53,532 nucleotides of DNA from Guillardia theta CCMP2712 (GCF_000315625.1 NW_005434507.1:1-53532), one strand, 5' to 3'; shown: positions 3,887-52,946, numbered from the stretch's first letter. A program made the numbers and translations. The notes: generated from the letters alone by a model not told the origin.

Positions 3887-4412
3887 ATGCGACTCGGAGG
3901 AGGCTTCCTCCTCCTCTCCTCCTGCCCCCTCCCTCCTGACTTCTTCTCCCTCCCCCTCTCCTCCTGCCCCTGCGGTGCCCCTCGCCTACACGACGACGGC
4001 CCGGGCCCTGCCTCTTCTGCTCCTCGACTCAAGCTGACCCCCTCCCTGAGCAAGCGGACGCTGAGGAGGAGCAGCTGTCCTCGCCTTCCCCCGACGACTC
4101 TGCCGGGCTGAGCTCTTGCTCGGACCTCCTCCTCGCATCCCAAGACCGATCCCGCTGGGACGCCGACGCCCGCAGGACCCACAGCCAGGCCTGCACGGGC
4201 AAGAGCCGGCTGAGCGCGCAGGAGAGGCTCGACATCGTGTGCATGTACTACACGGCACCGGCAAAGACGAGCTGCCGGAGGACGGTGCACCAGTGGGACA
4301 TCGCCAAGGCGTACGGGAAGAGCCGAAGAGGAAGAAGCGGGCTATGCAGCATCATTTGGAGGGAAAGAACCAAGGGCAGAAGCATTGTGCTGAGCTCAAG
4401 CATCAGCGTTAG
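3887..4412 (+). pseudogene. HTH family copy 1, subfamily I, disrupted
   Basis: Encodes SRWDADARRTHSQACTGKSRLSAQERLDIVCMYYTAPAKTSCRRTVHQWDIAKAYGKSR. A ~100-bp deletion relative to copy 3 then removes AAISKVLK onward, and there is an upstream frameshift near 4000. Confidence 0.75.
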
Positions 4413-4870
4413 CGGATGAACAAGAAGAAGGAGGAGAAGAAGAAGAAGAAGAAGGAGAACAAGAAGAAGAAGAAGAAGAAGAAAGGAGGAGGGAGAGGAG
4501 GAGGAGGAGGGGGAGGAGTCCTGCTCTGTCAAGTTTTGTCTGGTGCTGTCCTCTCCTGTCCTCTTCTGTCCTGTCCTGTCCTCTCCTGTCCTGTCCCGGC
4601 CTCCTGTCCTCTGCTCTGCTCTGCTCTCCTCTCCTCTCGTCTCCTCTCCGCTCTGCTCCGCGCTCTTCTCCCCTTGCTTGCATGAAACCTCTCAGTCTCG
4701 AAAAAGCAACAAGGCTAGTCAATCAAAGACGGCCAAGTTTCCGAATCAGTACTGAGTGCCCGGCCTCTTCCGCCGGGCCCGGGCCCGGCCGGCCGGGGCT
4801 TGCCCTGTCACAGAAGTTCTAGGCTAACGGAGTTATATAGTAGTAAACCGAAGGAACTCACTTGCGACCT

Positions 4871-5195
4871 CTTTACTCAAAGTTAAGTTAAAAATCAGTA
4901 CGAGGACAATCAGGAGAGTCGAGGAGGCTTGACCCTGACACTGTCGCACAGGCCAAACGGACCCAATCGGGCCTGCCAACTGCTGTCCCCCAAACTTAAC
5001 TGATACCTTTACTTAACAGCGCGCAGGCGACCAGCGCCATGCCAGGGATGTCGCTGTGGCCGCCGCCGAAGGAATGAGACGCATACCGGCCCGGGAATGC
5101 ACCCGCGATGATGGTAGCGAAGGACAGGGAGGCCTTGAGCTGACGAAAGATCCTGGACCGGATGCATTTGCAAGTCGGATCACCTGAGACGTCTA
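4871..5195 (-). mobile_element. Dispersed repeat, longest copy in the window; probable 3' end of a non-LTR retroelement or SINE-like element
   Basis: Minus strand ends ...CTCTCCTGATTGTCCTCGTACTGATTTTTAACTTAACTTTGAGTAAA. Homologous pieces at ~14545-14640, ~17614-17659, ~32940-33155, ~35845-35993, 43696-43743, 48698-48747 and 48901-48957. Confidence 0.6.
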
Positions 5196-5879
5196 GATAC
5201 CGTTCTCGATTTTTGCGTGTCATATTAAGAATGGAATGTGAAGAAGAAGAGGAAGATGTAAGGGGACAGATAGAATCAGTGAGTGGAATCTGTAAGAGAT
5301 TGGATGGGAAAGAGATTGGATCTGTAAGAGATTGGTCAACCCGAAGACCTCCTCTTGGAGTTCTGTAAGCCAACTGATTACTTTGCTGTGTGAGAAGAGA
5401 GCTTGTTGCTTGTCAGCAGCTTCGGAGTTGAGCACGAAATCGCAGTCCAACCCCTGAGAAGATCAAGAGTTGCTGGAAAGACGGGGGTCGGTTTCTTTGT
5501 ACATGAGGAAATGCTCGCACCAGCAAATGTCTTCGTTGCGCTAGTGATAATGACGAAAAAACCACTTGAAGTTTAAGTTTCAGTCAAACATGTCTCTAAG
5601 GTCTGGCGTCAGGCATGTTTCCAGAAGGAACAACCGCTCAAAGACTTTCGGTGGAAGATTGATACAACCATATATTGGAGTCCTACAAAGGTCTTCATAG
5701 ATGAGGCGGCAGTGGGTGTCACGAAATTGACCTTAGCTCGGGAAAGGATGCAAATCCGTTGACGGAAGAGAATTACATGGGCGTAAGAAGATAGGATCGT
5801 GGGCAGCCTGACATATGTCACATTTAGTTGGGATGTCATCTGTAGATCCGTGAATACGGTTCAGATCCTGCTGCATGCA

Positions 5880-6853: not shown

Positions 6854-7130
6854 AAGCAAATAATGTGATATAACGTTAAACTTGAAACAAACACTAAGCA
6901 AATAATGTGATATAACGTTAAACTTGAAACAAACACTAAGCAAATAATGTGATATAACGTTAAACTTGAAACAAACACTAAGCAAATAATGTGATATAAC
7001 GTTAAACTTGAAACAAACACTAAGCAAATAATGTGATATAACGTTAAACTTGAAACAAACACTAAGCAAATAATGTGATATAACGTTAAACTTGAAACAA
7101 ACACTAAGCAAATAATGTGATACAACGTTA
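6854..7130. repeat. 42-bp AT-rich minisatellite, about 6.6 near-perfect copies
   Basis: Unit AAGCAAATAATGTGATATAACGTTAAACTTGAAACAAACACT with no spacers. Confidence 0.95.
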
Positions 7131-7520: not shown

Positions 7521-8029
7521 ATGTCCCCGTCTCTACCTTTCCTCCTCCCTCAAGACCCCTCCTTCCACCCCTCCTCCCTCCTCCCCATCGACCCCGTCGA
7601 CGTCCCAGACCCCTCCGCTTCTACCAGTGATGACCGCTGCCTGTCGCCTTGCAGTGTGCTTCACCTCCCCCTCCTCCCTGAGGACCCTTCCTGGCCCGTC
7701 GATGCCCCCGACTGTCTGTTCTGGCCCGACGACCCCTCCCTCGACTCCCTCGCGGCTCCCGTGGACGCGAGCTGGGGGTCGGAGACCGGCCGCTGGGACG
7801 CGGCGGCGCGGAGCAAGCACAGCTCGGCGTGCATGGGCAGGAGCCGGCTGACCGATCAGGAGAAGCTCGACATCGTCTGCCTCTACTACTCCGCGCCGAC
7901 CACGACCTCAGCAAGGTGCTGAGGCCGGAGAACGCGAGGGGGGTCATGACGACGGCGCAAGGGCTCATGGTCAGGAGCCGCAACGAGATCCTCGAGAGCA
8001 TCGCGAAGTTGTCAACCCCCGAGGGTTAA
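7521..8029 (+). pseudogene. HTH family copy 2, subfamily II, internal deletion with frameshift
   Basis: MSPSLP...SRLTDQEKLDIVCLYYSAPTTT is joined out of frame to SKVLRPENARGVMTTAQGLMVRSRNEIL; the helix-2/turn segment is missing. Confidence 0.8.
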
Positions 8030-8177
8030 TATCATGAACCTTCAGCCTAGCTCAACATAAACGTCCATCTATCTCTCTCTATTCTCGCACAACAAACAAG
8101 TCAAGCCAACACTCACTGATAGCTCGCGTCCACGGGAGCCAACACTCACGGGATGCTCAACACCTGAGGAGGAAAGC

Positions 8178-8571
8178 TTGTCAACATCCAAGGACAGAAC
8201 ACCCCTACTGTCCTCGCCCTCCCCCTACGACTCTGCGGGGCCGAGCCCTTGCTCGGATCTCCTCCTCGCCTCCCAAGACCGACCAGAGGCTCAACAACGT
8301 GTGCATGTACTACTCGGCGCCAGCATCGACGAGCTTCCGGAGGACGGTGCACCAGTGGGACATCGCCAAGGCGTACGGGAAGAGCCGAGCGGCGATCAGC
8401 AAGGTGCTGAAGCCGGAGTACGCGATAGGGGTGATGAAGACGAAGAAGCGAGCGGGGGTGATGAAGAGGATCAAGGAGGAGGCGAAGAGGAAGAAGCGGG
8501 CTATGCAGCATCATTTGGAGGGAAAGAACCAAGGGCAGGAGCATTGTGCTGAGCTCAAGCATCAGCGTTAG
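8178..8571 (+). pseudogene. HTH family copy 3, subfamily I, 5'-truncated or deleted
   Basis: CMYYSAPASTSFRRTVHQWDIAKAYGKSRAAISKVLKPEYAIGVMKT... is intact, but the SRLSAQEKLDIV helix is mostly deleted. Confidence 0.7.
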
Positions 8572-9367: not shown

Positions 9368-9991
9368 TCAGCCAGGGAGCTTGAGAGCTGTGCTGGTCGG
9401 CGGGGGCTCCTCCTTGAGACGCTCCTCCTTGGCGATGTTGTCGAGGATCTCGTTGCGGCTCCTGACCACGAGCCCTCGAGCCGTCGCCATGACCCCCCTC
9501 GCGTACTCCGGCCTCAGCACCTTGCAGATCGCCGCACGGCTCTTGCCGTACATCCTTGACAGGTCCTGCTGTCGTATCGCCCGTCGGTGCTTGGTCGTGG
9601 TCGGGGCGGAGTANNNNNNNNNNNNNNNNNNNNNNNNNNNNNNNNNNNNNNNNNNNNNNNNNNNNNNNNNNNNNNNNNNNNNNNNNNNNNNNNNNNNNNN
9701 NNNNNNNNNNNNNNNNNNNNNNNNNNNNNNNNNNNNNNNNNNNNNNNNNNNNNNNNNNNNNNNNNNNNNNNNNNNNNNNNNNNNNNNNNNNNNNNNNNNN
9801 NNNNNNNNNNNNNNNNNNNNNNNNNNNNNNNNNNNNNNNNNNNNNNNNNNNNNNNNNNNNNNNNNNNNNNNNNNNNNNNNNNNNNNNNNNNNNNNNNNNN
9901 NNNNNNNNNNNNNNNNNNNNNNNNNNNNNNNNNNNNNNNNNNNNNCTTGAGGGAGGAAGGAAGGGAGGAGGGAGGGTAGAGATGGGAGCAT
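9368..9991 (-). CDS. HTH family copy 4, subfamily II, interrupted by an assembly gap
   Basis: Both ends match copy 5 (MLPSLPSLLPSFLPQ ... YSAPTTTKHRRAIRQQDLSRMYGKSRAAICKVLRPEYARGVMATARG); same 624-nt span. Confidence 0.7.
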   Translation of the reverse strand: MLPSLPSLLPSFLPQXXXXXXXXXXXXXXXXXXXXXXXXXXXXXXXXXXXXXXXXXXXXXXXXXXXXXXXXXXXXXXXXXXXXXXXXXXXXXXXXXXXXXXXXXXXXXXXXXXXXXXXXXXXXXXXYSAPTTTKHRRAIRQQDLSRMYGKSRAAICKVLRPEYARGVMATARGLVVRSRNEILDNIAKEERLKEEPPPTSTALKLPG

Positions 9992-11336
9992 GGCAGGAGC
10001 TGCGGAGGGAGGGGAAGGAGGTTTTGAAAGGAGGTAGCAGGGGGGAGGTACACTCCCCAACTCCGACGACCCGCGGACCCCCACCTCCTCAGAGGCCATC
10101 AAGCAGCACCGGTGAGTACTTTCAACATGTTCTTCATCCCTCGACTCGATCGGTCCCCGTACCCCCGTACCCCCGTACCCCCTTTTCCTCATGATAGTGC
10201 CCGGGTAAAAGGGGGGTGCGGAGGGTCGTCAACGGTCCCTCTCCGGAAGTAACTTATTATCTTTCTCTTGTTCCCCGATCCGTGGACCCCCACCCCCTCG
10301 AACCCATGAACAAGGACCGGTGAGTACTTCGGCTCAGGAGCGCCATGCGACTTTTATCCCCTGGTGGATTATAAGAAGTACACTTCTTTTTTTCGAGATC
10401 TTCCTGCCGCACCCCCTTTGATCCACCTTGTAGAGGGGGTGGAGGTACCGGGACAAGGCCGGGGCAACAAGACGACTGCCTGGCTCCCTCCTCGTCTTCT
10501 CCCTCGTCCCCGTCGCTTGTGCCTTGCTCGTGCTCGACTCAAGACACGCCGTGGACCACCAACACGCGAGCTGAGAACGACTCGATCATCGTACGGCCAT
10601 AAGCCATGGCTACAGGCCGTAGGTAGATACAAGCGTGCAGAATAAGGCTCAGGCAGCACAAAGTACTTGGTTGTAGTCCAGCTTTCATCGCCGAAGCTCT
10701 TTTATGTATGACATGAATGTCAGTCAGGTATGCCAAGCGCGATCAGCGACGGCCCTACCTTCTCCCATGCCAGGAGGGAGTGAGAAGCGAGCAGATTTTC
10801 CTCTTGTCTATCGATGAGCACAGCCCCAGTCGTCACTCACATGCCCAGTAGAAGGTAATCCATCGCCACTTTCTCTCTCTCTCTTTGCCTCCCTCGTCCT
10901 GATCTCCTCCTCTGCGGCCGATGGCTTCATCATCACTCCTGTCTCATGACTGACGGCACAACGACTCCAAGTCCAGGGCTGCGAGGCCCTCGGGGGGTCC
11001 CGGGCAGCGTCGTGGGGGACTCAATAGCATCAAGCAGGAGCCCGTCAAGCGCTTGTCCTGATGACTCATGATACGGCACACCGTGCCCCGCGCGTGTAGT
11101 GAGTAGTTTAGTCAGCGTCCTAGCCGACGGCGGTAGCCTTTCGTGCTCGTGTTGTGCTCGTGCTCTATAATCGACGCAGCAGCGATCGCTCTGGTAACCT
11201 CTCTCTCTGATCTCAAGGACGTGTGTACAGCACCACCCCTCCCCCCCTCCCCTCCATGCCCATCCCCGTATCTGCCCTTTCCCTGTATACGCCAGGACCA
11301 GATCCTGAGCAGCATCACAGTGTCTCCTCCTGCCTC

Positions 11337-11960
11337 TCAGCCAGGGAGCTTGAGAGCTGTGCTGGTCGGCGGGGGCTCCTCCTTGAGACGCTCCTCCTTG
11401 GCGATGTTGTCGAGGATCTCGTTGCGGCTCCTGACCACGAGCCCTCGAGCCGTCGCCATGACCCCCCTCGCGTACTCCGGCCTCAGCACCTTGCAGATCG
11501 CTGGCCGGCTCTTCCCGTACATCCTTGACAGGTCCTGCTGTCGTATCGCCCGTCGGTGCTTGGTCGTGGTCGGGGCGGAGTAGTAGAGGCAGACGATGTC
11601 GAGCTTCTCCTGCGCGGTCAGCCGGCTCCTGCCCCTGCACGCCGAGCTGTGCTTGCTCCGCGCCGCCGCGTCCCAGCGGCCGGTCTCCGACCCCCAGCTC
11701 GCGTCTACGGGAGCCGCGAGGGAGTCGAGGGAGGGGTCGTCGGGCCAGAACAGACAGTCGGGGGCATCGACGGGCCAGGAAGCGTCCTCAGGGAGGAGGG
11801 GGAGGTGAAGCACACTGCAAGGCGACAGGCAGCGGTCATCACTGGTAGAAGCGGAGGGGTCTGGGACGTCGACGGGGTCGATGGGGAGGAGGAAGAAGGG
11901 GTGGAAGGAGGGGTCTTGAGGGAGGAAGGAAGGGAGGAGGGAGGGTAGAGATGGGAGCAT
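11337..11960 (-). CDS. HTH family copy 5, subfamily II, intact 207-aa protein with a CENP-B-N/psq-like HTH
   Basis: Open ATG-TGA frame: Pro/Ser/Asp-rich N-terminus, then SRLTAQEKLDIVCLYY...QQDLSRMYGKSRPAICKVLR. Confidence 0.8.
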   Translation of the reverse strand: MLPSLPSLLPSFLPQDPSFHPFFLLPIDPVDVPDPSASTSDDRCLSPCSVLHLPLLPEDASWPVDAPDCLFWPDDPSLDSLAAPVDASWGSETGRWDAAARSKHSSACRGRSRLTAQEKLDIVCLYYSAPTTTKHRRAIRQQDLSRMYGKSRPAICKVLRPEYARGVMATARGLVVRSRNEILDNIAKEERLKEEPPPTSTALKLPG

Positions 11961-13456: not shown

Positions 13457-14137
13457 ATGACTCATGTTATCTCAACCCGGCAGTTACGATCACTATGGAG
13501 CGATAAACTGACTCGTAAGGCCTCAATGGCATCATCTAAACACCTCGACCCCTTCCTCCTGACTTCTTCTCCCTCCCCCTCCCCTGCTCCTGCGGTGCCC
13601 CTCGCCCACACGACGACGGCCCCTGCCTCTTCTGCTCCTCGACTCAAGCTGACCCCCTCCCTGAGCAAGCGGACGCTGAGGAGGAGCGGCTGTCCTCGCC
13701 TTCCCCCGACGACTCTGCGGGGCAGAGCCGTTGCTCGGACCTCCTCCTCGCCTCCCAAACGGCTCGGACCTCCTCCTCGCCTCCCAAGGACCCACAGCCA
13801 GGCCTGCACGGGCAAGAGCCGGCTGAGCGCGCAGGAGAGGCTCGACATCGTGTGCATGTTCTACTCGGCGCAAGCGACGACAAGCTGCCGGAGGACGGTG
13901 CACCAGTGGGACATCGCCAAGGCGTACGGGAAGAGCCGGGCGGCGATCAGCAAGGTGCTGAAGCCGGAGTACGCGCTAGGGGTGATGAAGACGGCGGAGG
14001 GGCTACAAATGAAGGGGCGGACTATGGTGCTGAGAGCCATCAGGGAAGAGTCGAAGAAGAAGAAAATGCAGCGGCAGCATCAGCAGCAGAAACAGAAGGG
14101 AGACACTCATGAAAAAGCTCGCCAGAAAAGAACATGA
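13457..14137 (+). CDS. HTH family copy 6, subfamily I; intact HTH, N-terminus read in an alternative frame
   Basis: 226-aa ORF with KSRLSAQERLDIVCMFY...HQWDIAKAYGKSRAAISKVLKPEY; C-terminus identical to copy 8. Confidence 0.7.
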   Translation: MTHVISTRQLRSLWSDKLTRKASMASSKHLDPFLLTSSPSPSPAPAVPLAHTTTAPASSAPRLKLTPSLSKRTLRRSGCPRLPPTTLRGRAVARTSSSPPKRLGPPPRLPRTHSQACTGKSRLSAQERLDIVCMFYSAQATTSCRRTVHQWDIAKAYGKSRAAISKVLKPEYALGVMKTAEGLQMKGRTMVLRAIREESKKKKMQRQHQQQKQKGDTHEKARQKRT

Positions 14138-15118: not shown

Positions 15119-15542
15119 ATGGCACCTCCCGCATACGCCCCTTCCTCCTACGATGACTCCTTGTATCTCCTCTCCTCCTTTCCCCTCCCTCCTGACTTCT
15201 TCTCCCTCCCCATCGAACCTTGCTGCTGCGGTGTCGAGCCTCGATGCCCGCAGACAGACCCACAGCCAGGCCTGCACGGGCAAGAGCCGGCTGAGCGTGC
15301 AGGAGAAGCTCGACATCGTGTGCATGTTCTACTCGGCGCCAGCGACGACGAGCTGCCGGAGGACGGTGCACCAGTGGGACATCGCCAAGGCGTACGGGAA
15401 GAGCCGGGCGGCGATCAGCAAGGTGCTGAAGCCCGAGGATCGCGAGGAGGGTGATGATGACGAAGGAGGGGGTGGAAGTGCCAGAGCGGGATCTTGTGCT
15501 GCCTGGAGGATCAGAAAGGAGGGAGCAAGGAGAGAGACATGA
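15119..15542 (+). pseudogene. HTH family copy 7, subfamily I, frameshifted 5' part and diverged 3' part
   Basis: MAPPAY...FPLPPDFFSLP in one frame and the HTH (SRLSVQEKLDIVCMFY...AAISKVLKPE) in another; similarity is lost after KPE. Confidence 0.65.
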
Positions 15543-24944: not shown

Positions 24945-28644
<3,700 letters not shown>

Positions 28645-30285: not shown

Positions 30286-30328
<43 letters not shown>

Positions 30329-42285: not shown

Positions 42286-42909
42286 ATGTCCCCGTCTCTA
42301 CCCCTCCTCCTCCCTCCCTTCCTCCTTGACGACCTCTCCTTCCACCCCTCCTTCCTCCTCCCCATCGACCCCGTCGACATCCCAGACCCCTCCGCTACTA
42401 CCTGTGATGACCGCTGCCTGTCGCCTTGCAGTGTGCTGCCCCTGCCCCTCCTCTTCCCTGACCCTTCCTGCCCCGTCGCCTCTGCCCTCGACCTCTCCTG
42501 GTCCGACGACCCCTCCCTCGACGCCCTGCCGGATCCCGGACCTCCCGGCAGCTGGGGCTCGGAGACCAGCCGCTGGGACGCGGCGGCGCGGAGCAAGCAC
42601 AGCTCGGCGTGTAGGGGCAGGAGCCGGCTGACCGCGCAGGAGAAGCTCGACATCGTCTGCCTCTACTACTCCGCCCCGGCCGCGACCAATAATCGACGGA
42701 CAATCCAGCAGCAGGACTTGTCGAGGAAGTACTGCAAGAGCCGGGCGGCGATCTGCAAGGTGCTGAGGCCGGAGTACGCGAGGGGGGTCATGGCGACGGC
42801 TCAAGGGCTCATGGTCAAGAACCACAACGAGATCCTCGACAACATCGCACAGGAAGAGCGTCGCAAGCACAAGGCCTTGCGCCGAGGGCCATGCGAGGCG
42901 ACTGGCTGA
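42286..42909 (+). CDS. HTH family, array gene A2 (207 aa)
   Basis: Intact frame; QQDLSRKYCKSRAAICKVLR. Confidence 0.8.
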   Translation: MSPSLPLLLPPFLLDDLSFHPSFLLPIDPVDIPDPSATTCDDRCLSPCSVLPLPLLFPDPSCPVASALDLSWSDDPSLDALPDPGPPGSWGSETSRWDAAARSKHSSACRGRSRLTAQEKLDIVCLYYSAPAATNNRRTIQQQDLSRKYCKSRAAICKVLRPEYARGVMATAQGLMVKNHNEILDNIAQEERRKHKALRRGPCEATG

Positions 42910-43695
42910 GAGGTGCGAGGAGGTATTGTGATGCTGCTCAGGGTCCGGACGTAGCGGATACTGCACTGGCTGGGCAGTTGCCCGACCTCCGAGACAGCAG
43001 CGTGTCTGATGGGCTAGACCTGATGCACCTTGCTGGCAACTTCTTGTCATCATGCCTGATCAATGCCGACAGGCATCAGAGCGGGATGAAGGGGCTCGAC
43101 TTGCTAGGTGCTCGCGCGGGGCGATTTGGAGGACGACTTGCCCGCCGATTGGTGGTGGGCCCGAGTGAAGAACTTGGAAGCACTGGCAAAATAGTATGCG
43201 TGAGGCGGCCGATTGACGCTAGCCTCCAAATGTCTAGATCCTAGTTCATTTGACATCAATCCGAGATTTACATACGTTTAGATCCAAAATATCACAAACA
43301 AACATGGCTCCATGACTCTTTCATGGGCGAAGTGGGTGGATGAGGGTCTTGCTGGTGTTCAACTTGGAATCAGTCAAGATCCCTGAATAGTCTTCATCAA
43401 GAGATGTGAACGACATTGATTCACAATCATGACATGAAAGGTATTTGCGGCAGGCCGGGCAGCATATGTAGATCTTACTGTTATTGGTAAGATGATGTTG
43501 AAGAGCCAGCACAACTATCCATGTCGACCCCCCTACATAACCGTGATCCGATCTCGAATCACACGCCGCATGTTGTTCAAAACCTGTGTTTTGACCTTCA
43601 GGCTCCCTTGAATGAGAAGTCTTGATGAGACCATGATGCCTATGCAACGGTTTCTGAGTATCATGTTGAGTACATTGAAAGTGTTTGGAAAGACT

Positions 43696-43743
43696 ACTCT
43701 CCTGATTGTCCTTGTACTAATTTTTAACTTAATTTTGAGTGAA
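43696..43743 (+). mobile_element. Terminal ~48-bp fragment of the dispersed repeat, inserted in array unit 2
   Basis: ACTCTCCTGATTGTCCTTGTACTAATTTTTAACTTAATTTTGAGTGAA; also in unit 3 (48698-48747), absent from unit 1 (~38830). Confidence 0.7.
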
Positions 43744-44535
43744 AAGTTGTATACATCTTGCAATTTCGGTCACAGCGGGCCTGCTCTAGAGTCAGCCCGA
43801 TTCCTTGTCACTGAGACTCCCGGGAGGCACCATCGGAGTCGATCCCCGGCCCGCCGCCCCGACCCGCCGGCCCCACGAAAGTGAAATAAATAATAATAAA
43901 CCATGAAAGGATAATTTTACTACTCTCCAGCAAGTATGTGACCAGCGACTCAAACAAGCAAGCGATCACCGGTCCTGATAACAGTGATCAGGGCTCGAGG
44001 GGGGGTGGGTGTCGCGGACTGGGGAAGCCCGTGACTCTCCGGAGCAGTACCAGGGGTACACGTCGAGTCGAGTCGGACTGGTGACTCAAAAAAGAAAAGT
44101 TTAATACCGTCCACTACCCCTCCTGTTCTCCACTAGTGAACTATCACAGCCCACCGGTCCAGTCTCCCTCAGTGGGGGAATGTCGCTACCATGTTGTCTT
44201 TTCGGTCCGCGACTCTCCGCCTGACAAGATGGAATGAAGACACCCCTGAAGAGGGGGGTAGTGCGCGAGGTAGGCTGGTGGCGGGGGGTACACAGCGAGT
44301 CGGACTCGTAAAGAAAGTAAGCAGACGCTTATAACAAAAAGGTAGTCATCGGTCCTCCTTTAAAAATTAGAAGTTTACTACAGGTCGTAGTCATCCCGTG
44401 GAACCACTGCCGATTCCCAAGAGTGGGGGAATGTCGCTAACTCCTGCTGTCCCCTTGGCTTACAAGCTGCCAGCCCCTGCTCCCTCCCTCACCCGCTGAG
44501 CCCCTCCTCCTATCCCTCCCTCCGCAGCTCCTGCT

Positions 44536-45183
44536 ATGTCCCCGTCTCTACCCCTCCTCCTCCCTCCCTTCCTCCTTGACGACCTCTCCTTCCACCCCTC
44601 CTTCCTCCTCCCCATCGACCCCGTCGACATCCCAGACCCCTCCGCTACTACCTGTGATGACCGCTGCCTGTCGCCTTGCAGTGTGCTGCCCCTGCCCCTC
44701 CTCTTCCCTGACCCTCCCTGCCCCGTCGCCTCTGCCCTCGACCTCTCCTGGCCCGACGACCCCTCCCTCGACGCCCTGCCGGATCCCGGACCTCCCGGCA
44801 GCTGGGGCCCGGAGACCAGCCGCTGGGACGCGGCGGCGCGGAGCAAGCACAGCTCGGCGTGCAGGGGCAGGAGCCGGCTGACCGCGCAGGAGAAGCTCGA
44901 CATCGTCTGCCTCTACTACTCCGCGCCGGCCACGACCAAGCACCGACGGACGATACGACAGCAGGACCTGTCGAGGATGTACGGGAAGAGCGGGCCAGCG
45001 ATCAGCAAGGTGCTGAGGCCGGAGTACGCGAGGGGGGTCATGGCAACGGCTCAAGGGCTCATGGTCAAGAACCGCAACGAGATCCTTCACAACATCGCGG
45101 AGGAGCGTCTCAAGGAGGAGACCCAGCAGACAATCACAACACTCAAGGTCATGCGCCGAGGGCCAGGGAGAGCGACTGGCTGA
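44536..45183 (+). CDS. HTH family, array gene B2 (215 aa)
   Basis: Intact frame, nearly identical to B1. Confidence 0.8.
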   Translation: MSPSLPLLLPPFLLDDLSFHPSFLLPIDPVDIPDPSATTCDDRCLSPCSVLPLPLLFPDPPCPVASALDLSWPDDPSLDALPDPGPPGSWGPETSRWDAAARSKHSSACRGRSRLTAQEKLDIVCLYYSAPATTKHRRTIRQQDLSRMYGKSGPAISKVLRPEYARGVMATAQGLMVKNRNEILHNIAEERLKEETQQTITTLKVMRRGPGRATG

Positions 45184-47326
45184 GCGATGGAGCTCTGGGT
45201 GGCCGCCTGCATCGAAGACGACGGCGCTTACATGCAGCCAGCCACTGCTCCCTCCCTCAACCGCTGAGCCCCTCTTTCTCTCTCCCTCCGCAGTCTCTAC
45301 GCTTTTGCCTCCCTCCGTTCCTCCCTGAAGACCACTCCTTTGTTACGAAGCAGTTAAGACGAGTGTGCTGTTGTCGTTGTAAGAGCTTTGAAACTCTCAA
45401 GGTGGAGAGTTTTTTTCCCGCGTCTATCAATGGCCTTCTGAGACGAGGACGGTCTGTGCTGTGTGAGTATGCTACTCGAACTCTTTCTCTACTTCCCTTC
45501 TTGTGAGTCGAGAGATCAGACAGCAATAGCAGATTCACATCCTATCATTGGTAGCCTAAGGTTGGTTGTGTTGGAACTCAACACACGAAGAGACACACGA
45601 TGAGTAGAATCCTGGACTTGACACCTAGGACAACAACCAGGCGCCGCTTGAAGCACGGGTGGGACGCCCGGCCGCCTTTCCCACACGAGGGATGCTTTTG
45701 AGAGATCGTTGATATCGAGGTTGTGTCTCGTAAGCAATGCGATCACGATGAGGAAGAAGAAAGAGCATCCACAAAATGTAGAAAGCAGCCACCATGTGGA
45801 TTTCAGAGTCTAGATCATTTCAGATCTCAGACCGTAGGGTTTGTATCAACGTTGTTGATTGTAGGGGTCTTTTATGATGATGAAACGTTGAGAGGAGCAT
45901 CCATCCCCGGCATATGCAAACCAGCTGGCACATACATGCTTGAAGGCTCTCGTTGGCATGCCAGCAGACGAGTCAGGGTGGCACCTTTGCGGAAGGTTCT
46001 GTAAGGAACATCTCCAGCAACATAGATGATCTAACATACAAAGAAAGCCACACAGACAAACCATGCTTCGATCTATGAAACCCATGCCGAGAAAGATCCG
46101 TCACTTCCTTGACGAGATGACGGAGATACGCAACGTCAAAGCGCTTGCACTGGGCAGCTAGTAGTCAGTCGCTGCCGAGCCTGCTCTGTGACTCCAGCTC
46201 AGGGAACTACTCGAGCGTGAGTATGAATCCGAAAATGATGACTGCTCCCCCAGTGGCTGAGCTCGCATGCAACCACCGGTCCTATGCCTAGCTATTCCAT
46301 CCGATTGGAGGGTGGGGTGTCGCGGACTGCCCTTCCGAGTGGGACGTGACTCACACTTGTCAGTTTGAAAAACCGTTGAGCTTGACTCCGAAGATGACGG
46401 TAAAAGGAGTGATTTCGGGTTCAATGTCATATTCAAATCACGTACCTTTTCCCAAGTTCCGAAGAAAAAAATCATGAAATGGGGGGTACCGAATAGCCTT
46501 CAAGCCTTCGAGGTTTGCCCACCGGTCCTATACCAAGAAGCCCACCGGTCCTATAACCAGCCTCTGCAGCCCCCGGACTTGATGATCGACTTCTCGGGAC
46601 GGACCTGGCCGGGGCCCCTTCTGCCTCAATGCTCGCCGAGTCCGGTGGCCCCGAGGCCGGGGAGATTGAGGGTGTACTACTTGTAGCTCTTCAAGAGCTG
46701 AGACCGATTGATGACTCGTAGCTCTTCAAGGGCCAGGAAGCCTGAGGAGACGGTTGAGCCCTTCCATGTGGTCAGGGCTCTTGCCGGCCCTTCCGCCGGT
46801 CAGTCCTGCCAGTAGTCACGGTCCGAGCCTACGTACCCTACTTGACTAAGTCCACTGTAAAATCAAACAATAACAGTAGTAATAATGGTACAGATTACTA
46901 CACAACCCTGCCGATCATTCCCCCAAAAACTTGGGGAATGTCGCCGCCAACTCAGCGAGATGCCGCCAGCCGCGGCCGGGCCTACAACCCCTCGCCTTCC
47001 ACCCCACCCCCCAGGTCGTAGTCAATACTACCAGTCAATGTCTCTGGACCCTACCCCCGCCTCCGGCGCTCAAAAGTTGGCAGGACCTGATCCTCCATGT
47101 GGTCAGGGCTCTTGCGCGGGGGTGGGGTGTCGCGGACCGGTCGAGGGGTGGCGGGGGGTTGACAGCGAGTCGACCTCGTAAAGAAAGAAATCAGGCACTG
47201 CGGCACTTGGAAAAAAATTATTGTTTTCTCGATACTTTGAGTAAAACAAGACAGGTTCACTACCGTCCCTCTCCGCTGACCAGCTGCCAGCCCCTGCTTC
47301 CTCTCCCTCCCTCCGCAGCTCCTGCT

Positions 47327-47950
47327 ATGTCCCCGTCTCTACCCCTCCTCCTCCCTCCCTTCCTCCTTGACGACCTCTCCTTCCACCCCTCCTTCCTCCT
47401 CCCCATCGACCCCGTCGACATCCCAGACCCCTCCGCTACTACCTGTGATGACCGCTGCCTGTCGCCTTGCAGTGTGCTGCCCCTGCCCCTCCTCTTCCCT
47501 GACCCTCCCTGCCCCGTCGCCTCTGCCCTCGACCTCTCCTGGTCCGACGACCCCTCCCTCGACGCCCTGCCGGATCCCGGACCTCCCGGCAGCTGGGGCC
47601 CGGAGACCAGCCGCTGGGACGCGGCGGCGCGGAGCAAGCACAGCTCGGCGTGCAGGGGCAGGAGCCGGCTGACCGCGCAGGAGAAGCTCGACATCGTCTG
47701 CCTCTACTACTCCGCCCCGGCCGCGACCAATAATCGACGGACAATCCAGCAGCAGGACCTGTCGAGGAAGTACTGCAAGAGCCGGGCGGCGATCTGCAAG
47801 GTGCTGAGGCCGGAGTACGCGAGGGGGGTCATGGCGACGGCTCAAGGGCTCATGGTCAAGAACCACAACGAGATCCTCGACAACATCGCACAGGAAGAGC
47901 GTCGCAAGCACAAGGCCTTGCGCCGAGGGCCAAGCGAGGCGACTGGCTGA
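47327..47950 (+). CDS. HTH family, array gene A3 (207 aa)
   Basis: Intact frame from the conserved ATG (MSPSLPLLL). Confidence 0.8.
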   Translation: MSPSLPLLLPPFLLDDLSFHPSFLLPIDPVDIPDPSATTCDDRCLSPCSVLPLPLLFPDPPCPVASALDLSWSDDPSLDALPDPGPPGSWGPETSRWDAAARSKHSSACRGRSRLTAQEKLDIVCLYYSAPAATNNRRTIQQQDLSRKYCKSRAAICKVLRPEYARGVMATAQGLMVKNHNEILDNIAQEERRKHKALRRGPSEATG

Positions 47951-49555
47951 GAGGTGCGAGGAGGTATTGTGATGCTGCTCAGGGTCCGGACGTAGCGGAT
48001 ACTGCACTGGCTGGGCAGTTGCCCGACCTCCGAGACAGCAGCGTGTCTGACGGGCTAGACCTGATGCACCTTGCTGGCAACTTCTTGTCATCATGCCTGA
48101 TCAATGCCGACAGGCATCAGAGCGGGATGAAGGGGCTCGACTTGCTAAGTGCTCGCGCGGGGCGATTTGGAGGACGACTTGCCCGCCGATTGGTGGTGGG
48201 CCAGAGTGAAGAACTTGGAAGCACTGGCAAAATAGTATGCGTGAGGCGGCCGATTGACGCTAGCCTCCAAATGTCTAGATCCTAGTTCATTTGACATCAA
48301 TCCGAGATTTACATACGTTTAGATCCAAAATATCACAAACAAACATGGCTCCATGACTCTTTCATGGGCGAAGTGGGTGGATGAGGCTCTTGCTGGTGTT
48401 CAACTTGGAATCAGTCAAGATCCCTGAATTGAACGACATTGATTTACAATCATGACATAAAAGGTATTTGCGGCAGGCAGCATTATGCAGATCTTACTGT
48501 TATTGGTAAGGTGATGTTGAAGAGCCAGCACAACTATCCATGTCGACCCCCCTACATAACATCTCGAACAACACGCATGTTGTTCAAAACCTGTGTTCTG
48601 ACCTTCTCCCTTGAATGAGAAGTCTTGATGAGACCATGATGCCTATGCAACGGTTTCTGAGTATCAAGTTGAGTACATTGAAAGAGTTTGGAGAGACTAC
48701 TCTCCTGATTGTCCTCGTACTGATTTGTAACTTAACTTTGAGTAAAAAGTTGTATACATCGGCAGTCACTTTCGGTCACAGCGGGCCTGCTCTAGACGGT
48801 CAGCCCGATTCCTTGGCACTGAGACTTTCGGGAGGCACCATCGGAGTCGATCCCCGGCCCGCCGGCCCCACGAAAGTGAAATAAATAACTAAGGCACTTA
48901 CTTTAGTCAAAGTTAAGTTAAAAATCAGTACGGCTTGACCCTGACACTGTCGCACAGAAATAAAATAATAATTAACCATGAAAGGATAATTTTACTCCTC
49001 TCCAGCAAGTATGTGACCAGCACCTCAAACAAGCAAGCGATCACCGGTCCTGATAAGACTGTGATCAGGGCTCTAGGGGGGTGGGGTGTCGCGGACTGGG
49101 GAAGCCCGTGACTCTCCGGAGCAGTACCAGGGGTACACGTCGAGTCCGCAACTCTCCACCCCCCAAGACCCCTTGAGTACTGACTGTACAACTTATGGAA
49201 TGAGGACACCCCTGAACTTATGGAATGAGGACACCACTGAAGGGGGGGTAGTGGGGGAGGTAGGGTGGTGGCGGGGGGTACACAGCGAGTCGGACTCGTA
49301 AAGAAAGTAAGCAGACGCTTATAACAAAAAGGTAGTCATCGGTCCTCCTTTAAAAATCAGAAGTTTACTACCGTCCCCCACCCCACCCCACCCCTCCGGC
49401 CCGATGACATGTCATCCCGTGGGACCACTGCCGATTCCCAAGAGTGGGGGAATGTCGCTACCTCCTGCTGTCCCCTTGGCTTACAAGCTGCCAGCCCCTG
49501 CTCCCTCCCTCACCCGCTGAGCCCCTCCTCCTCTCCCTCCCTCCGCAGCTCTGCT

Positions 49556-50200
49556 ATGTCCCGTCTCTGCCCTTCCTCCTCCCTCCCTTCTCCTTGACGA
49601 CCTCTCTTTCCACCCTCTTTCCTCCTCCCCATCGACCCCGTCGACATCCCAGACCCCTCCGCTACTACCTGTGATGACCGCTGCCTGTCGCCTTGCAGTG
49701 TGCTGCCCCTGCCCCTCCTCTTCCCTGACCCTCCCTGCCCCGTCGCCTCTGCCCTCGACCTCTCCTGGCCCGACGACCCCTCCCTCGACGCCCTGCCGGA
49801 TCCCGGACCTCCCGGCAGCTGGGGCTTGGAGACCAGCCGCTGGGACGCGGCGGCGCGGAGCAAGCACAGCTCGGCGTGCAGGGGCAGGAGCCGGCTGACC
49901 GCGCAGGAGAAGCTCGACATCGTCTGCCTCTACTACTCCGCCCCGGCCACGACCAAGCACCGACGGACGATACGACAGCAGGACCTGTCCAGGATGTACG
50001 GGAAGAGCGGGCCAGCGATCAGCAAGGTGCTGAGGCCGGAGTACGCGAGGGGGGTCATGGCGACGGCTCAAGGGCTCATGGTCAAGAACCGCAACGAGAT
50101 CCTCCACAACATCGCGGAGGAGCGTCTCAAGGAGGAGACCCAGCAGACCATCACAACACTCAAGGTCATGCGCCGAGGGCCAGGGAGAGCGACTGGCTGA
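49556..50200 (+). pseudogene. HTH family, array gene B3, with three single-base deletions near the 5' end (pseudogene or sequencing error)
   Basis: ATG 49556 reads MSRLCPSSSLPSP* because of 1-nt losses in C/T-rich tracts; the downstream frame, including the HTH, is intact. Confidence 0.6.
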
Positions 50201-52322
50201 GCGATGGAGCTCTGGGTGGCCGCCTGCATCGAAGACGACGGCGCGTACAAGCAGCCAGCCACTGCTCCCTCCCTCACCCGCTGAGCCCCTCTTCCTCTCT
50301 CCCTCCGCAGTCTCTACGCTTTCTCCTCCCTCCCTTCCTCCCTGAAGACCACTCCTTTGTTCCGAAGCAGTTAAGACGAGTGTGCTGTTGTCGTTGTAAG
50401 AGCATTCAAACTCTCAAGGTGGAGAGTTTTTTTCCCGCGTCTATCAATGGCCTTCTGAGACGAGGACGGTCTGTGCTGTGTGAGTATGCTACTCGAACTC
50501 TTTCTCTACTTCCCTTCTTGTGAGTCGAGAGATCAGACAGCAACAGCAGATTCATATCCTATCATTGGTAGCCTAAGGTTGGTTGTGTTGGAACTCAACA
50601 CGCAAAGAGACACACGATGAGTAGAATCCTGGACTTGACACCTAGGACAACAACCAGGCGCCGCTTGAAGCACGGGTGGGACGCCCGGCCGCCTTTCCCA
50701 CACGAGGGATGCTTTTGAGAGATCGTTGATATCGAGGTTGTGTCTCGTAAGCAATGCGATCACGATGAGGAAAAAGAAAGAGCATCCACAAAATGTAGAA
50801 AGCAGCCACCATGTGGATTTCAGAGCCTAGATCATTTCAGATCTCAGACTGTAGGGTTTGTATCAACGTTGTTGATTGTAGGGGTCTTTTATGATGATGA
50901 AACGTTGAGAGGAGCATCCATCCCCGGCATATGCAAACCAGCTGGCACATACATGCTTGGAGGCTCTCGTTGGCATGCCAGCAGACGAGTCAGGGTGGCA
51001 CCTTTGCGAGAGGTTCTGTAAGGAACATGTCCAGCAACATAGCTGATGTAACATACAAAGAAAGCCACACAAACCATGCTTCGATCATTGAAACCCATGC
51101 CGAGAAAGATCCGTCACTTCCTTGACGAGATGACGGAGATTCGCAACGTCAATGCGCTTGCACTGGGCAGCTAGTAGTCAGTCGCTGCCGAGCCTGCTCT
51201 GTGACTCCAGCTCAGGGAACTACTCGAGCGTGAGTATGAATCCGAAAATGATGACTGCTCCCCCAGTGGCCGAGCTCGCATGCAACCACCGGTCCTATGC
51301 CTAGCTATTCCATCCGATTGGAGGGTGGGGTGTCGCGGACTGCCCTTCCGAGTGGGACGTGACTCACACTTGTCAGTTTGAAAAACCGTTGAGCTTGACT
51401 CCGAAGATGACGGTAAAAGGAGTGATTTCGGGTTCAATGTCATATTCGAATCACGTACCTTTTCCCAAGTTCCGAAGAAAAAAATCATGAAATGGGGGGT
51501 ACCGAATAGCCTTCAAGCCTTCGAGGTTTGCCCACCGGTCCTATACCAAGAAGCCCACCGGTCCTATAACCAGCCTCTGCAGCCCCCGGACTTGATGATC
51601 GACTTCTCGGGACGGACCTGGCCGGGGCCCCTTCTGCCTCAACGCTCTCCGAGTCCAGTGGCCCCGGGGCCAGGAAGATCAAGGGCGTACTACTTGTAGC
51701 TCTTCAAGAGCTGAGACCGATTGATGACTCGTAGCTCTTCAAGGGCCAGGAAGCCGGAGGAGACGGTTGAGCCCTCCCACGTGGCCAAGGTCTCTTGCCG
51801 GCCCTTCCGCCGGTCAGTCCTGCCAGTAGTCACGGTCCGAGCCTACGTACCCTACTTGACTAAGTCCAGTAAAATCAAACAATAACAGTAGTAATAATGG
51901 TACAGATTACTACACAACCCTGCCGATCATTCCCCCAAAAACTGGGGGAATGTCGCCGCCAACTCAGCGAGATGCCGCCAGCCGCGGCCGGGCCTACAAC
52001 CCCTTGCCTTCCACCCCACCCCCCAGGTCGTAGTCAATACTACCAGTCAATGTCTCTGGACCCTACCCCCGCCCCCGCTCAAAAGTTGGCAGGACCTGAT
52101 CCTCCATGTGGTCAGGGCTCTTGCGCGGGGGTGGGGTGTCGCGGACCGGTCGAGGGGTGGCGGGGGGTTGACAGCGAGTCGACCTCGTAAAGAAAGAAAT
52201 CAGGCACTGCGGCACTTGGAAAAAAATATGCTATGTGTAAAACAAGACAGGTTCACTACCGTCCCTCTCCGCTGACCAGCTGCCAGCCCCTGCTTCCTCT
52301 CCCTCCCTCCGCAGCTCCTGCT

Positions 52323-52946
52323 ATGTCCCCGTCTCTACCCCTCCTCCTCCCTCCCTTCCTCCTTGACGACCTCTCCTTCCACCCCTCCTTCCTCCTCCCC
52401 ATCGACCCCGTCGACATCCCAGACCCCTCCGCTACTACCTGTGATGACCGCTGCCTGTCGCCTTGCAGTGTGCTGCCCCTGCCCCTCCTCTTCCCTGACC
52501 CTCCCTGCCCCGTCGCCTCTGCCCTTGACCTCTCCTCGTCCGACGACCCCTCCCTCGACGCCCTGCCGGATCCCGGACCTCCCGGCAGCTGGGGCCCGGA
52601 GACCAGCCGCTGGGACGCGGCGGCGCGGAGCAAGCACAGCTCGGCGTGCAGGGGCATGAGCCGGCTGACCGCGCAGGAGAAGCTCGACATCGTCTGCCTC
52701 TACTACTCCGCCCCGGCCGCGACCAAGCACCGACGGACAATCCAGCAGCAGGACCTGTCGAGGAAGTACTGCAAGAGCCGGGCGGCGATCTGCAAGGTGC
52801 TGAGGCCGGAGTACGCGAGGGGGGTCATGGCGACGGCTCAAGGGCTCATGGTCAAGAACCACAACGAGATCCTCGACAACATCGCACAGGAAGAGCGTCG
52901 CAAGCACAAGGCCTTGCGCCGAGGGCCAAGCGAGGCGACTGGCTGA
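52323..52946 (+). CDS. HTH family, array gene A4 (207 aa)
   Basis: Intact frame; MSRLTAQEKLD...KHRRTIQQQDLSRKYCKSRAAICKVLR. Confidence 0.8.
   Translation: MSPSLPLLLPPFLLDDLSFHPSFLLPIDPVDIPDPSATTCDDRCLSPCSVLPLPLLFPDPPCPVASALDLSSSDDPSLDALPDPGPPGSWGPETSRWDAAARSKHSSACRGMSRLTAQEKLDIVCLYYSAPAATKHRRTIQQQDLSRKYCKSRAAICKVLRPEYARGVMATAQGLMVKNHNEILDNIAQEERRKHKALRRGPSEATG

What the first reader, a model, noticed from the sequence alone, without database searches (positions are those of the whole stretch)
3887..52946. Fifteen copies of an intronless, stand-alone CENP-B-N/psq-like HTH gene in 50 kb
Seen: 15 copies of a core SRL(S/T)AQE(K/R)LDIVC(M/L)(F/Y)Y-x12-13-Q(W/Q)D(I/L)(A/S)(K/R)xY(G/C)KSxxAI(S/C)KVL(K/R). 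Subfamily I (HQWDIAKAYG) has 5 copies and subfamily II (QQDLSRxY) has 10; about 9-10 have open frames. The coding regions lack introns while neighbouring genes have many. Known: the pattern R-L-T-x-x-E-K-L-x-I-I ... A-x-x-Y-G-x-S-x-x-x-I-S-x-I-L-K is the N-terminal psq-type HTH of CENP-B and pogo/Tigger transposases, normally followed by a second HTH and a DDE domain. None follows here; instead there is a Pro/Ser/acidic N-terminus. Inference: a lineage-specific, transposase-derived DNA-binding family under rapid birth-and-death amplification. It could be a transposon-repressor or satellite-binding system, a transcription-factor expansion, or the cargo of a non-autonomous element.
Basis: partly seen in the sequence, partly recalled or inferred. 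Interest (0 to 1): 0.8.

Follow-up and report, generated by a model that had tools for sequence, protein, structure and literature searches.

The report
Amplified CENP-B-type HTH gene array
A cryptophyte alga (Guillardia theta) carries more than 30 tandemly amplified, single-exon genes for small DNA-binding proteins that keep only the first helix-turn-helix of the CENP-B / pogo-transposase DNA-binding domain. The family is real and under selection, but no RNA from the two copies tested was found in one culture RNA-seq run, and its role is unknown.

Summary
The window is Guillardia theta scaffold JH993131.1, bases 1-53532. It holds 15 copies of the motif: 5 of subfamily I and 10 of subfamily II. 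Eight are intact, one has an open frame but a damaged arm, and one is cut by an assembly gap.

Seven copies come from 3.4 units of a ~5-kb tandem amplicon carrying an A/B pair. The same first-reader note exists for this stretch (s1-437406). The array continues beyond the window, with at least 27 copies on this scaffold and 4 on another.

The CENP-B_N/psq reading is supported, but only indirectly:
- Pfam does not see the window copies.
- A profile of the 102-aa core finds 85 proteins in 1.84 billion. The long ones carry Pfam CENP-B_N plus HTH_Tnp_Tc5, sometimes PB1, and never DDE.
- A wider profile hits human CENP-B best in the PDB (E 0.0017).
- The AlphaFold core's best structural match is CENP-B bound to DNA (Z 5.4).

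The core is under purifying selection (pN/pS 0.39, p 2e-10) and is homogenised by gene conversion. The acidic Pro-rich N-terminus is nearly neutral.

No RNA-seq read fell on the tested A/B pair.

Most likely these are condition-specific DNA-binding regulators truncated from a two-HTH protist family. The transposon-repressor and satellite-binding ideas have no support.

The parts
3940..4419 (+). Copy 1, subfamily I, broken. No in-frame ATG. Homology ends inside helix 3, after GKSR, where unrelated sequence is joined.
7521..7922 (+). Copy 2, subfamily II fragment of 133 aa: N-terminus, arm and helix 1, then a stop.
   Evidence: 94% identical to 11990-11562. Fused to copy 3 in gene model GUITHDRAFT_120053.
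8038..8571 (+). Copy 3, subfamily I C-terminal fragment. Helix 1 is degenerate; helices 2-3 and the tail are intact.
9368..10192 (-). Copy 4, subfamily II, interrupted by assembly gap 9614-9945. The arm and helix 1 are unread.
   Evidence: The flanks match copy 5 at 98.9% and 91%, and the gap length equals the paralog spacing (332 nt).
11337..11960 (-). Copy 5, subfamily II, intact, 207 aa.
13457..14137 (+). Copy 6, subfamily I, 226-aa open frame. The HTH is intact, but the RWD arm is replaced by a local duplication.
15153..15542 (+). Copy 7, subfamily I, 129 aa. The cassette is intact up to KVLKPE, then unrelated sequence follows. The N-terminus is also unrelated.
16502..17203 (+). Copy 8, subfamily I, intact, 233 aa, with a C-x-C-G...C-x2-C motif in the N-terminal region.
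36371..53532 (+). About 5.03-kb tandem amplicon, 3.4 units at 96-98% identity. Each unit carries paralog A (215 aa) and paralog B (207 aa). The array runs off the window end and another B copy follows at 54.8 kb.
37512..38135 (+). Copy 9, paralog B, intact, 207 aa. The frame also stays open upstream to 37080.
39495..40142 (+). Copy 10, paralog A, intact, 215 aa. This protein was modelled. Residues 1-95 are disordered and acidic. The remaining elements are the arm (96-116), helices 117-129, 142-149 and 153-160 (the HTH), and further helices 162-175 and 180-207.
42286..42909 (+). Copy 11, paralog B, intact, 207 aa.
44536..45183 (+). Copy 12, paralog A, intact, 215 aa.
47327..47950 (+). Copy 13, paralog B, intact, 207 aa.
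49554..50200 (+). Copy 14, paralog A. The ATG is kept, but three 1-nt deletions in C/T runs in the first ~60 nt break the start of the frame. These could be sequencing errors.
52323..52946 (+). Copy 15, paralog B, intact, 207 aa, with Arg to Met just before SRL in the arm.

Best explanation
These are real protein-coding genes of a Guillardia-lineage multigene family.

Protein layout (about 210 aa):
- An acidic, disordered N-terminal half rich in Pro, Leu, Ser and Asp.
- A basic C-terminal DNA-binding module. It has a conserved N-terminal arm (W-x7-H-x3-C, then a basic stretch ending in R-L-T/S), a three-helix CENP-B_N/psq-type helix-turn-helix, and one or two further helices.

Origin: the module is the first half of the bipartite DNA-binding domain (CENP-B_N + HTH_Tnp_Tc5) shared by pogo/Tc5 transposases, CENP-B and their derivatives. 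The cluster genes are truncated, single-HTH offshoots of a wider protist family. That family keeps both HTHs, often adds a C-terminal PB1 domain, and has no DDE catalytic domain.

Evolution: the family grew by local tandem duplication, the latest event being a 5-kb unit with an A/B pair. It evolves as a mosaic through gene conversion. The arm+HTH cassette is kept nearly identical among paralogs and is under purifying selection. The N-terminus and C-tail drift almost neutrally.

Inferred mechanism (not shown): the conserved cassette binds one shared class of DNA sites through helix 3 and the basic arm, and the variable acidic tails act as activation or partner-recruiting regions. The proteins would then be transcription-factor-like regulators. 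Because no RNA was seen in a vegetative culture, I infer they are used only under particular conditions or life-cycle stages.
For: Family and amplification.

Remote homology:
- A profile built from the cluster copies plus one near-identical metagenome ortholog (A2) finds 85 proteins at E<=1e-3 in 1.84e9 sequences. Long relatives score E 7e-10 to 1e-8.
- 24 of 69 relatives match Pfam CENP-B_N and 26 match HTH_Tnp_Tc5.
- 8 match PB1 at E<=0.01, and the five checked individually at or above the PB1 cut-off are P0053, P0060 and P0093 (P0085 just below it).
- No DDE_1 appears in the family summary or in the 20 relatives scanned individually.
- The CENP-B_N match lies exactly on the A2-matched stretch and passes the curated cut-off in P0046 and P0042.
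- The wider profile A4 has CENP-B as its two best PDB hits: 1hlv E 0.0017 and 1bw6 E 0.004. The alignment runs through the linker into the second repeat.

Fold:
- AlphaFold core model, pLDDT 80.6, with the HTH region above 90.
- The best of 48,161 chains is CENP-B bound to DNA (1hlv): Z 5.4 over 61 residues. 1bw6, Tc3 and Brinker follow.
- The highest query TM in the atlas search is a Tigger-derived protein.
- Language-model neighbours are HTH_ABP1_N, CENP-B_N and Tc5 clusters.

Selection:
- Core pN/pS 0.39 (p 1.7e-10) against N-terminus 0.76, summed over six non-overlapping pairs.
- Cassette pN/pS 0.14-0.18 against a syntenic metagenome ortholog that is 84% identical including flanks.

Gene conversion: cassette pS is 0.02-0.04 where the N-terminus and tail are saturated.

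Transcribed relatives: related short forms exist as Hanusia phi proteins in EukProt, which I take to be transcriptome-derived. Their place in the family is shown in the tree.
Against: - No Pfam hit for any window copy, even at E<=10.
- Profiles of the cluster alone do not reach CENP-B in the PDB.
- Foldseek gives only generic HTH matches with E>0.1.
- The VIA Z of 5.4 is within 1 of unrelated HTH rows.
- Zero RNA-seq reads on both ORFs of one amplicon unit in 19.8 M reads, and no contig in three other presumed RNA runs.
- About a third of the window copies are broken.
- Gene conversion can mimic conservation and inflates apparent constraint within the array.
- DNA binding, nuclear location and any target are untested.
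Confidence: 0.6

Rival explanations
1. The array is a dead or dying amplified repeat. The ORFs are relics kept similar only by recent duplication and gene conversion, and no protein is made.
For: - No RNA-seq reads on the A and B ORFs.
- 5-6 of 15 window copies are truncated, rearranged or frameshifted.
- The cassette is nearly identical even in broken copies, which points to conversion regardless of function.
- Units are only 2-3% diverged, so their intact frames prove little.
- N-terminal pN/pS is 0.76.
Against: - Cassette pN/pS is 0.14-0.18 against a syntenic ortholog in another organism or strain, at pS 0.20-0.27.
- Core pN/pS is 0.39 with p 1.7e-10.
- Frames of about 200 codons stay open in copies diverged to pS 0.4-0.7.
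- The N-terminal short motifs are conserved within subfamily II.
- Related short forms occur as Hanusia phi proteins in EukProt.
Confidence: 0.2
2. The genes form a KRAB-ZFP-like defence or satellite-binding system. In this view a transposase-derived DNA-binding family diversifies in an arms race with transposons or centromeric repeats.
For: - The binding domain shares ancestry with pogo transposase and CENP-B DNA-binding domains.
- There is rapid tandem birth and death.
- 19-42-bp satellites lie beside some copies.
- Silence in standard culture does not exclude such a role.
Against: - The DNA-reading cassette is homogenised, not diversified. Helix 3 is almost invariant across the array, and variation sits in the H1-H2 loop and the disordered tails.
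- No target repeat or matching transposon was identified.
- No expression was seen.
Confidence: 0.1
3. The ORF is the cargo or remnant of a mobile element, either a non-autonomous pogo-type element or a retro-copied gene, which spread the copies.
For: - Between older paralogs, homology starts about 30-110 nt before the ATG and ends within about 50 nt after the stop.
- All family genes examined are single-exon.
- The domain type is typical of transposases.
Against: - No terminal inverted repeats around the copies.
- No poly(A) tails after the 3' ends.
- No DDE-bearing relative among 85 hits.
- All copies found lie in local clusters on a few scaffolds.
- Recent growth is clearly segmental tandem duplication that includes spacers.
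Confidence: 0.07

Closest known systems
CENP-B N-terminal DNA-binding repeat RP1 (Pfam CENP-B_N PF04218; PDB 1hlv, 1bw6) and psq-type HTH domains
   Same: - Three-helix HTH preceded by a basic arm ending in R/K-x-L-T.
- Helix 1 reads E-K-x-x-I-I, and helix 3 resembles S-x-I-S-x-I-L-K/R.
- Best PDB profile hit and best structural hit.
- Pfam CENP-B_N matches the same stretch in distant relatives.
   Different: - The window copies fall below Pfam detection.
- The H1-H2 loop is about 8 residues longer and hypervariable.
- There is an extra conserved N-terminal arm (W-x7-H-x3-C) that CENP-B lacks.
- There is no second repeat, no DDE-derived domain and no dimerisation domain.
DBD-only pogo-derived proteins such as Drosophila CAG (CG12346), described in PMC4231638
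   Same: - Short proteins of about 110-225 aa that keep the pogo/CENP-B DNA-binding domain and lack DDE_1.
- They are under purifying selection. One ortholog (D. simulans GD15259) keeps only CENP-B_N.
   Different: - CAG is a single-copy insect gene with both HTHs.
- Here only the first HTH remains, the phylum is Cryptophyta, there are more than 30 clustered copies evolving by gene conversion, and no expression has been seen yet.
pogo / Tigger / Tc5 transposases
   Same: They share the N-terminal HTH type. The long protist relatives also share the second (Tc5) HTH.
   Different: - No DDE_1 was seen in the relatives scanned.
- No TIRs were found.
- Copies are clustered.
- The direction of descent (transposase to host gene, or the reverse) is not established here.
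Unnamed protist family found here: W/H/C arm + CENP-B_N + HTH_Tnp_Tc5 +/- PB1 (for example P0046, P0053, P0060, P0077 and P0085; Hanusia phi P0055 has the arm and CENP-B_N only)
   Same: The arm and first HTH are the same, with E down to 7e-10 from the cluster profile. The linker up to the first helix of the second HTH aligns.
   Different: - The cluster proteins stop after that helix (no Tc5 HTH, no PB1).
- They carry a long acidic N-terminus.
- I found no paper describing this family.

Membership tests
Pfam CENP-B_N (PF04218) / psq-type HTH | Match to the family HMM at or above the curated cut-off (21.2 bits) | tested here: not met
   Five window copies give no CENP-B_N hit even at E<=10. 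The cut-off is met only in distant relatives reached by the cluster profile: P0046 at 22.0 bits and P0042 at 21.5 bits. G. theta P0019 reaches 19.4 bits.
Pfam CENP-B_N (PF04218) / psq-type HTH | Profile-level sequence similarity to a bona fide member (human CENP-B) | tested here: met
   Profile A4 (cluster plus relatives) against the PDB gives 1hlv_A at E 0.0017 and 1bw6_A at E 0.004 as the two best of 177,635 sequences. Cluster-only profiles A1 and A2 do not reach it.
Pfam CENP-B_N (PF04218) / psq-type HTH | Three-helix HTH fold superposable on CENP-B RP1 | tested here: inconclusive
   The confident model has three helices in HTH geometry. 1hlv_A is rank 1 of 48,161 chains, but Z is only 5.4, tied within 1 with other HTH folds. 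Foldseek returns generic HTH matches with E>0.1.
pogo/Tigger transposase or a simple deletion derivative of one | Second HTH (HTH_Tnp_Tc5) after the first | tested here: not met
   No Pfam hit. An HMM of the relatives' second HTH finds nothing better than E 0.79 in six-frame pieces of the window and about 60 kb more of the scaffold.
pogo/Tigger transposase or a simple deletion derivative of one | DDE_1 catalytic domain in the gene or in close relatives | tested here: not met
   None in the window copies. DDE_1 is not among the 25 most common families listed for the 69 relatives, nor in the 20 relatives scanned individually. Unannotated elements in the G. theta genome could not be searched.
pogo/Tigger transposase or a simple deletion derivative of one | Terminal inverted repeats and TA target-site duplication around the copy | tested here: not met
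   One amplicon unit has no inverted repeat flanking either ORF; the only pair found is 19 nt at 84% inside a spacer. Only one unit was scanned.
CENP-B proper (centromere protein) | Binding to a centromeric satellite box; C-terminal dimerisation domain | not testable with these tools
   No dimerisation domain is present in the sequence. DNA targets are unknown.
Domesticated, DBD-only pogo-related host genes (CAG-like) | DNA-binding domain retained, DDE lost, purifying selection, expression as a host gene | tested here: inconclusive
   The first HTH is retained and DDE is absent. Purifying selection acts on the core. No expression was seen for the amplicon copies.

The most novel reading that the evidence does not exclude
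The array is a silent-in-culture bank of regulators in which one conserved, gene-converted DNA-binding cassette is combined with many rapidly diverging acidic tails. Alternating A/B pairs are kept distinct in the cassette but identical in the tail. Such a layout would fit a life-cycle, mating-type or self-recognition switch in cryptophytes. It would also reveal an undescribed protist transcription-factor family (W/H/C arm + CENP-B_N + Tc5 HTH + PB1) related to pogo transposase DNA-binding domains.
Probability: 0.15. Interest if true: 0.65.

Novelty: new variant of a known kind. Interest (0 to 1): 0.4.

Why it matters
The work gives a domain assignment and relatives to about 40 G. theta 'hypothetical proteins'. 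It also shows that several public gene models here are probably wrong: some fuse fragments and some add spurious introns.

It points to an unnamed protist family in which the CENP-B/pogo-type bipartite DNA-binding domain occurs without a transposase core, sometimes with PB1. This bears on how often such domains serve as host regulators outside animals and fungi.

The mosaic pattern is a neat case of region-specific concerted evolution. The cassette is homogenised, the tails are saturated, and the A/B pair shows the reverse.

The practical value is limited until expression or DNA binding is shown.

Tried and rejected
- Pfam on five copies at E<=10 gave nothing relevant.
- PDB sequence search with the cluster-only profiles A1 and A2 gave nothing, or a chance Nesprin hit.
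- Foldseek against the PDB, with the full-length and the core models, gave only generic bacterial HTH regulators at E>0.1.
- The word-index protein search found only G. theta copies and one metagenome contig. The exhaustive HMM search was needed to reach relatives.
- The metagenome DNA scan with the core alignment gave 311 pattern matches, none confirmed.
- A search for conserved upstream blocks of the c84k/metagenome pair in the window gave no match.
- There are no tRNA or Rfam features in the window, so a SINE or tRNA-related origin of the repeats is not indicated.
- There are no poly(A) tails after the copies, so recent retroposition is rejected.
- There are no TIRs.
- Literature searches for Guillardia with CENP-B or pogo, and for Tc5 with PB1, found nothing specific.
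- Pfam on three neighbouring ORFs gave nothing informative.
- Considered and rejected: RWP-RK kinship of the 'RWD' arm. The motif order relative to the HTH is opposite and no Pfam hit supports it; this rests on my own knowledge and was not tested further.

Full report
**Identity of the window**

Exact-sequence look-ups place the window on Guillardia theta CCMP2712 nuclear scaffold JH993131.1 (112,452 nt), bases 1-53532, with the same coordinates. Earlier notes of this scan also name the organism. One first-reader note (s1-437406) covers the 36.4-53.5 kb amplicon on the same DNA.

**Checking the observation**

A six-frame scan for the two halves of the motif finds 15 loci, and tblastn with four family proteins finds the same 15 and no more.
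- Five copies are subfamily I (WDIAKAYG) and ten are subfamily II (QDLSR.Y).
- Eight have complete ATG-to-stop frames of 207-233 aa.
- One (13457-14137) is open, but the arm is replaced by a local duplication.
- One (49.5 kb) keeps its ATG but has three single-base deletions in C/T runs, which could be sequencing errors.
- Four are truncated or joined to unrelated sequence.
- One is cut by the gap 9614-9945.

That gap is the only one touching a copy. Its written length, 332 N, equals the distance between the homologous points in the neighbouring paralog (11583-11914), and the frame is continuous as written. Because the letters are unread, I do not score that copy. The other three gaps are more than 6 kb from any copy.

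The N-terminal half is Pro/Leu/Asp/Ser-rich with pI 4.1. The rest is basic, pI 10.2-10.7.

**How the copies arose**

Self-comparison shows that 36.4-53.5 kb is 3.4 units of a 5.03-kb tandem repeat at 96-98% identity. Each unit holds paralog A (215 aa) and paralog B (207 aa). Copies 4 and 5 are a 1,969-nt direct duplication.

The array continues beyond the window. Twelve more copies or fragments lie between 54.8 and 90.3 kb of the same scaffold, and four lie on scaffold JH993281.1.

More distant G. theta members sit in small groups of single-exon genes on other scaffolds:
- GUITHDRAFT_107687/107688/107689
- GUITHDRAFT_114294/114295/154379
- GUITHDRAFT_119890
- GUITHDRAFT_121301

The family therefore has about 40 members, all in local clusters and all with an uninterrupted CDS.

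**What the protein is**

Pfam sees nothing in five window copies even at E<=10. Cluster-only profiles find nothing meaningful among PDB sequences.

The exhaustive HMM search with a 102-aa core profile, built from the cluster copies plus one near-identical metagenome ortholog, found 85 proteins at E<=1e-3 among 1.84 billion. Twenty-two were at E<=1e-10.

The nearest hits are G. theta paralogs, Hanusia phi proteins from EukProt, and environmental contigs.

The further hits are 350-580-aa proteins at E 7e-10 to 1e-8. They share a striking pattern: W-x7-H-x3-C, a basic stretch, R/K-L-T/S-L-x-E/Q-K-L-E/D-I-I/V, a short loop, L-A-x-M-F/Y-G-K-S-R-x-A/T-I-S-K-I/V-L-R-P-E/D.

Scanning 69 of the hits against Pfam gave 24 CENP-B_N matches, 26 HTH_Tnp_Tc5 matches and 8 PB1 matches. 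DDE_1 was not among the families listed, and none of the 20 relatives scanned individually has it.

Where CENP-B_N matches, it lies on exactly the stretch matched by the cluster profile. It passes the curated cut-off in two proteins. The Tc5 domain passes in many.

A wider profile (cluster plus relatives, A4) then has human CENP-B as its two best hits in the whole PDB sequence set: 1hlv at E 0.0017 and 1bw6 at E 0.004. The alignment runs from the R-x-L-T arm through helix 3 and the linker into the start of the second repeat.

**Fold**

- The AlphaFold model of the full protein is disordered for residues 1-95 and confident for 110-195.
- The core-only model has pLDDT 80.6, with helices at core positions 24-36, 49-56 and 60-67, followed by two short helices and a long one.
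- Foldseek against the PDB gives only generic HTH regulators at E>0.1.
- The Foldseek-independent search of 48,161 representative chains ranks CENP-B(1-129) bound to DNA first: Z 5.4, 61 residues, rmsd 3.4.
- CENP-B RP1, Tc3 transposase and Brinker follow within the next rows. The Z values are modest and tied with other HTH folds.
- The atlas search gives its highest query TM-score to a Tigger-derived protein.
- Language-model neighbours are HTH_ABP1_N, CENP-B_N and Tc5 clusters, below the tool's reliability line.

Taken together, three partly independent lines agree on a CENP-B_N/psq-type HTH. No single line is strong on the window copies alone.

**What is missing**

An HMM of the relatives' region after the first HTH finds nothing (best E 0.79, low complexity) in six-frame pieces of the window and the other fetched parts of the scaffold.

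The cluster proteins align with the long relatives up to the G-V/L...K-R...L segment. In CENP-B this segment is the linker and the first helix of the second repeat. The cluster proteins then end. I read them as truncated derivatives of the two-HTH form.

A precedent for DBD-only pogo-related host proteins exists: Drosophila CAG, 225 aa, with one ortholog keeping only CENP-B_N (PMC4231638).

**Selection and mode of evolution**

Nei-Gojobori counts over six non-overlapping pairs give pN/pS 0.39 for the core (p 1.7e-10) and 0.76 for the N-terminus (p 0.005).

The most informative comparison is with a 1.5-kb metagenome contig (L001). It is syntenic with the copy at 84 kb at 84% identity including both flanks. 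There the cassette pN/pS is 0.17 at pS 0.27.

Splitting the gene into three parts shows strong mosaicism.
- Between the JH993281 paralogs, the arm+HTH cassette has pS 0.02-0.04, while the N-terminus and tail are saturated (pS 0.7-0.8).
- In the A/B pair of the amplicon the reverse holds: N-terminus pS 0.00, cassette pS 0.16.
- The hypervariable H1-H2 loop of the metagenome ortholog matches a different paralog (90 kb) rather than its syntenic partner.
- Even broken subfamily I copies keep a near-identical cassette.

This is gene conversion acting in tracts, on top of purifying selection on the cassette. It means constraint measured inside the array is partly inflated.

The tree places all subfamily II copies and L001 in one clade (support 93/95). 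Hanusia sequences group only with subfamily I-like and dispersed members. The large expansion is therefore specific to the Guillardia lineage as far as present data go.

**Mobile-element tests**

- No inverted repeats flank the ORFs in one amplicon unit.
- No poly(A) tracts follow them.
- There are no tRNA or Rfam features in the window.
- Between older paralogs, homology is confined to about -30/-110 through about +50 around the CDS. Conversion tracts explain this as well as mobility does.

**Expression**

One raw RNA-seq run with the same species label was sampled to 19.8 M reads. It put no read on either ORF of the unit 39100-44300 and only 20 reads on spacers. Contigs of three other presumed RNA runs held nothing.

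This is one condition and one unit, and no positive control gene could be laid in the same call. Related short forms occur as Hanusia phi proteins in EukProt. From memory, that EukProt set is transcriptome-based; I did not check this.

**Interpretation**

Shown:
- a real, amplified, single-exon family;
- a confident helical DNA-binding-type core;
- remote but consistent homology to the first HTH of the CENP-B/pogo DNA-binding domain;
- relatives with the full bipartite domain and no transposase core;
- purifying selection plus conversion on the cassette;
- near-neutral tails;
- no RNA in one culture data set.

Inferred: the proteins bind a common class of DNA sites through helix 3 and the basic arm. 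They use the acidic tails for activation or partner recruitment under conditions not sampled.

The repressor-of-transposons and satellite-binding ideas are not excluded. They are disfavoured because the DNA-reading part is the least variable part of the protein. A dead repeat remains a serious rival at about 0.2.

Noticed in passing
window 33539-34088 and 34264-34814: A 551-nt inverted repeat at 98.7% identity with a spacer of about 175 nt. It could be a foldback element or an assembly artefact.
   Followed up: no
window 6854-7131 and 12677-13116: A 42-bp tandem repeat (6.6 units, 99%) lies directly upstream of copy 2. A 19/42-bp satellite (11-22 units) lies between copies 5 and 6. The two consensus units do not look alike.
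   Followed up: no
window 16502-17200; L002 5788-6471, 9842-10477, 13067-13684; P0011, P0016, P0023, P0024: Subfamily I and the dispersed G. theta and Hanusia members carry a C-x2-C-G ... C-x2-C motif (spacing 8-17 residues) in the otherwise unalignable N-terminal region. It may be a small zinc knuckle. It is degenerate in subfamily II.
   Followed up: partly
window 39470-39494, 42261-42285, 37487-37511, 11961-11985(-): An identical pyrimidine tract ending in CAG sits 11 nt before the ATG in subfamily II copies. It looks like a 3' splice site, so a 5'UTR intron or an upstream exon is possible. This could not be tested without RNA.
   Followed up: partly
window 7833-8571: Public gene model GUITHDRAFT_120053 (P0010) joins a subfamily II N-terminal fragment to a subfamily I C-terminal fragment through a predicted intron. 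Models for the copies at 77 and 81 kb (306 and 343 aa) add downstream exons. These are probably annotation artefacts.
   Followed up: partly
window 40185-40290: Just after the stop of paralog A lies a 91%-identical copy of that gene's own upstream leader and first codons. It is a 5' fragment of a further copy inside each amplicon unit (families D2 and D3).
   Followed up: no
window 17566-17982 and 18023-18742 (- strand): Two adjacent ORFs end in the same ~45-residue translated stretch, which points to a repeated DNA element of about 150 nt. There is no Pfam hit.
   Followed up: no
window 27628-28644: A long open frame between two 100-N gaps has a membrane-helix-like start and an acidic or coiled tail. 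It is probably an exon of a neighbouring gene. There is no Pfam hit.
   Followed up: partly
proteins P0046, P0053, P0060, P0077, P0085, P0093 (environmental and MMETSP): These are long relatives with the W/H/C arm, CENP-B_N, HTH_Tnp_Tc5 and a C-terminal PB1 domain, and no DDE. I found no description of this architecture.
   Followed up: partly
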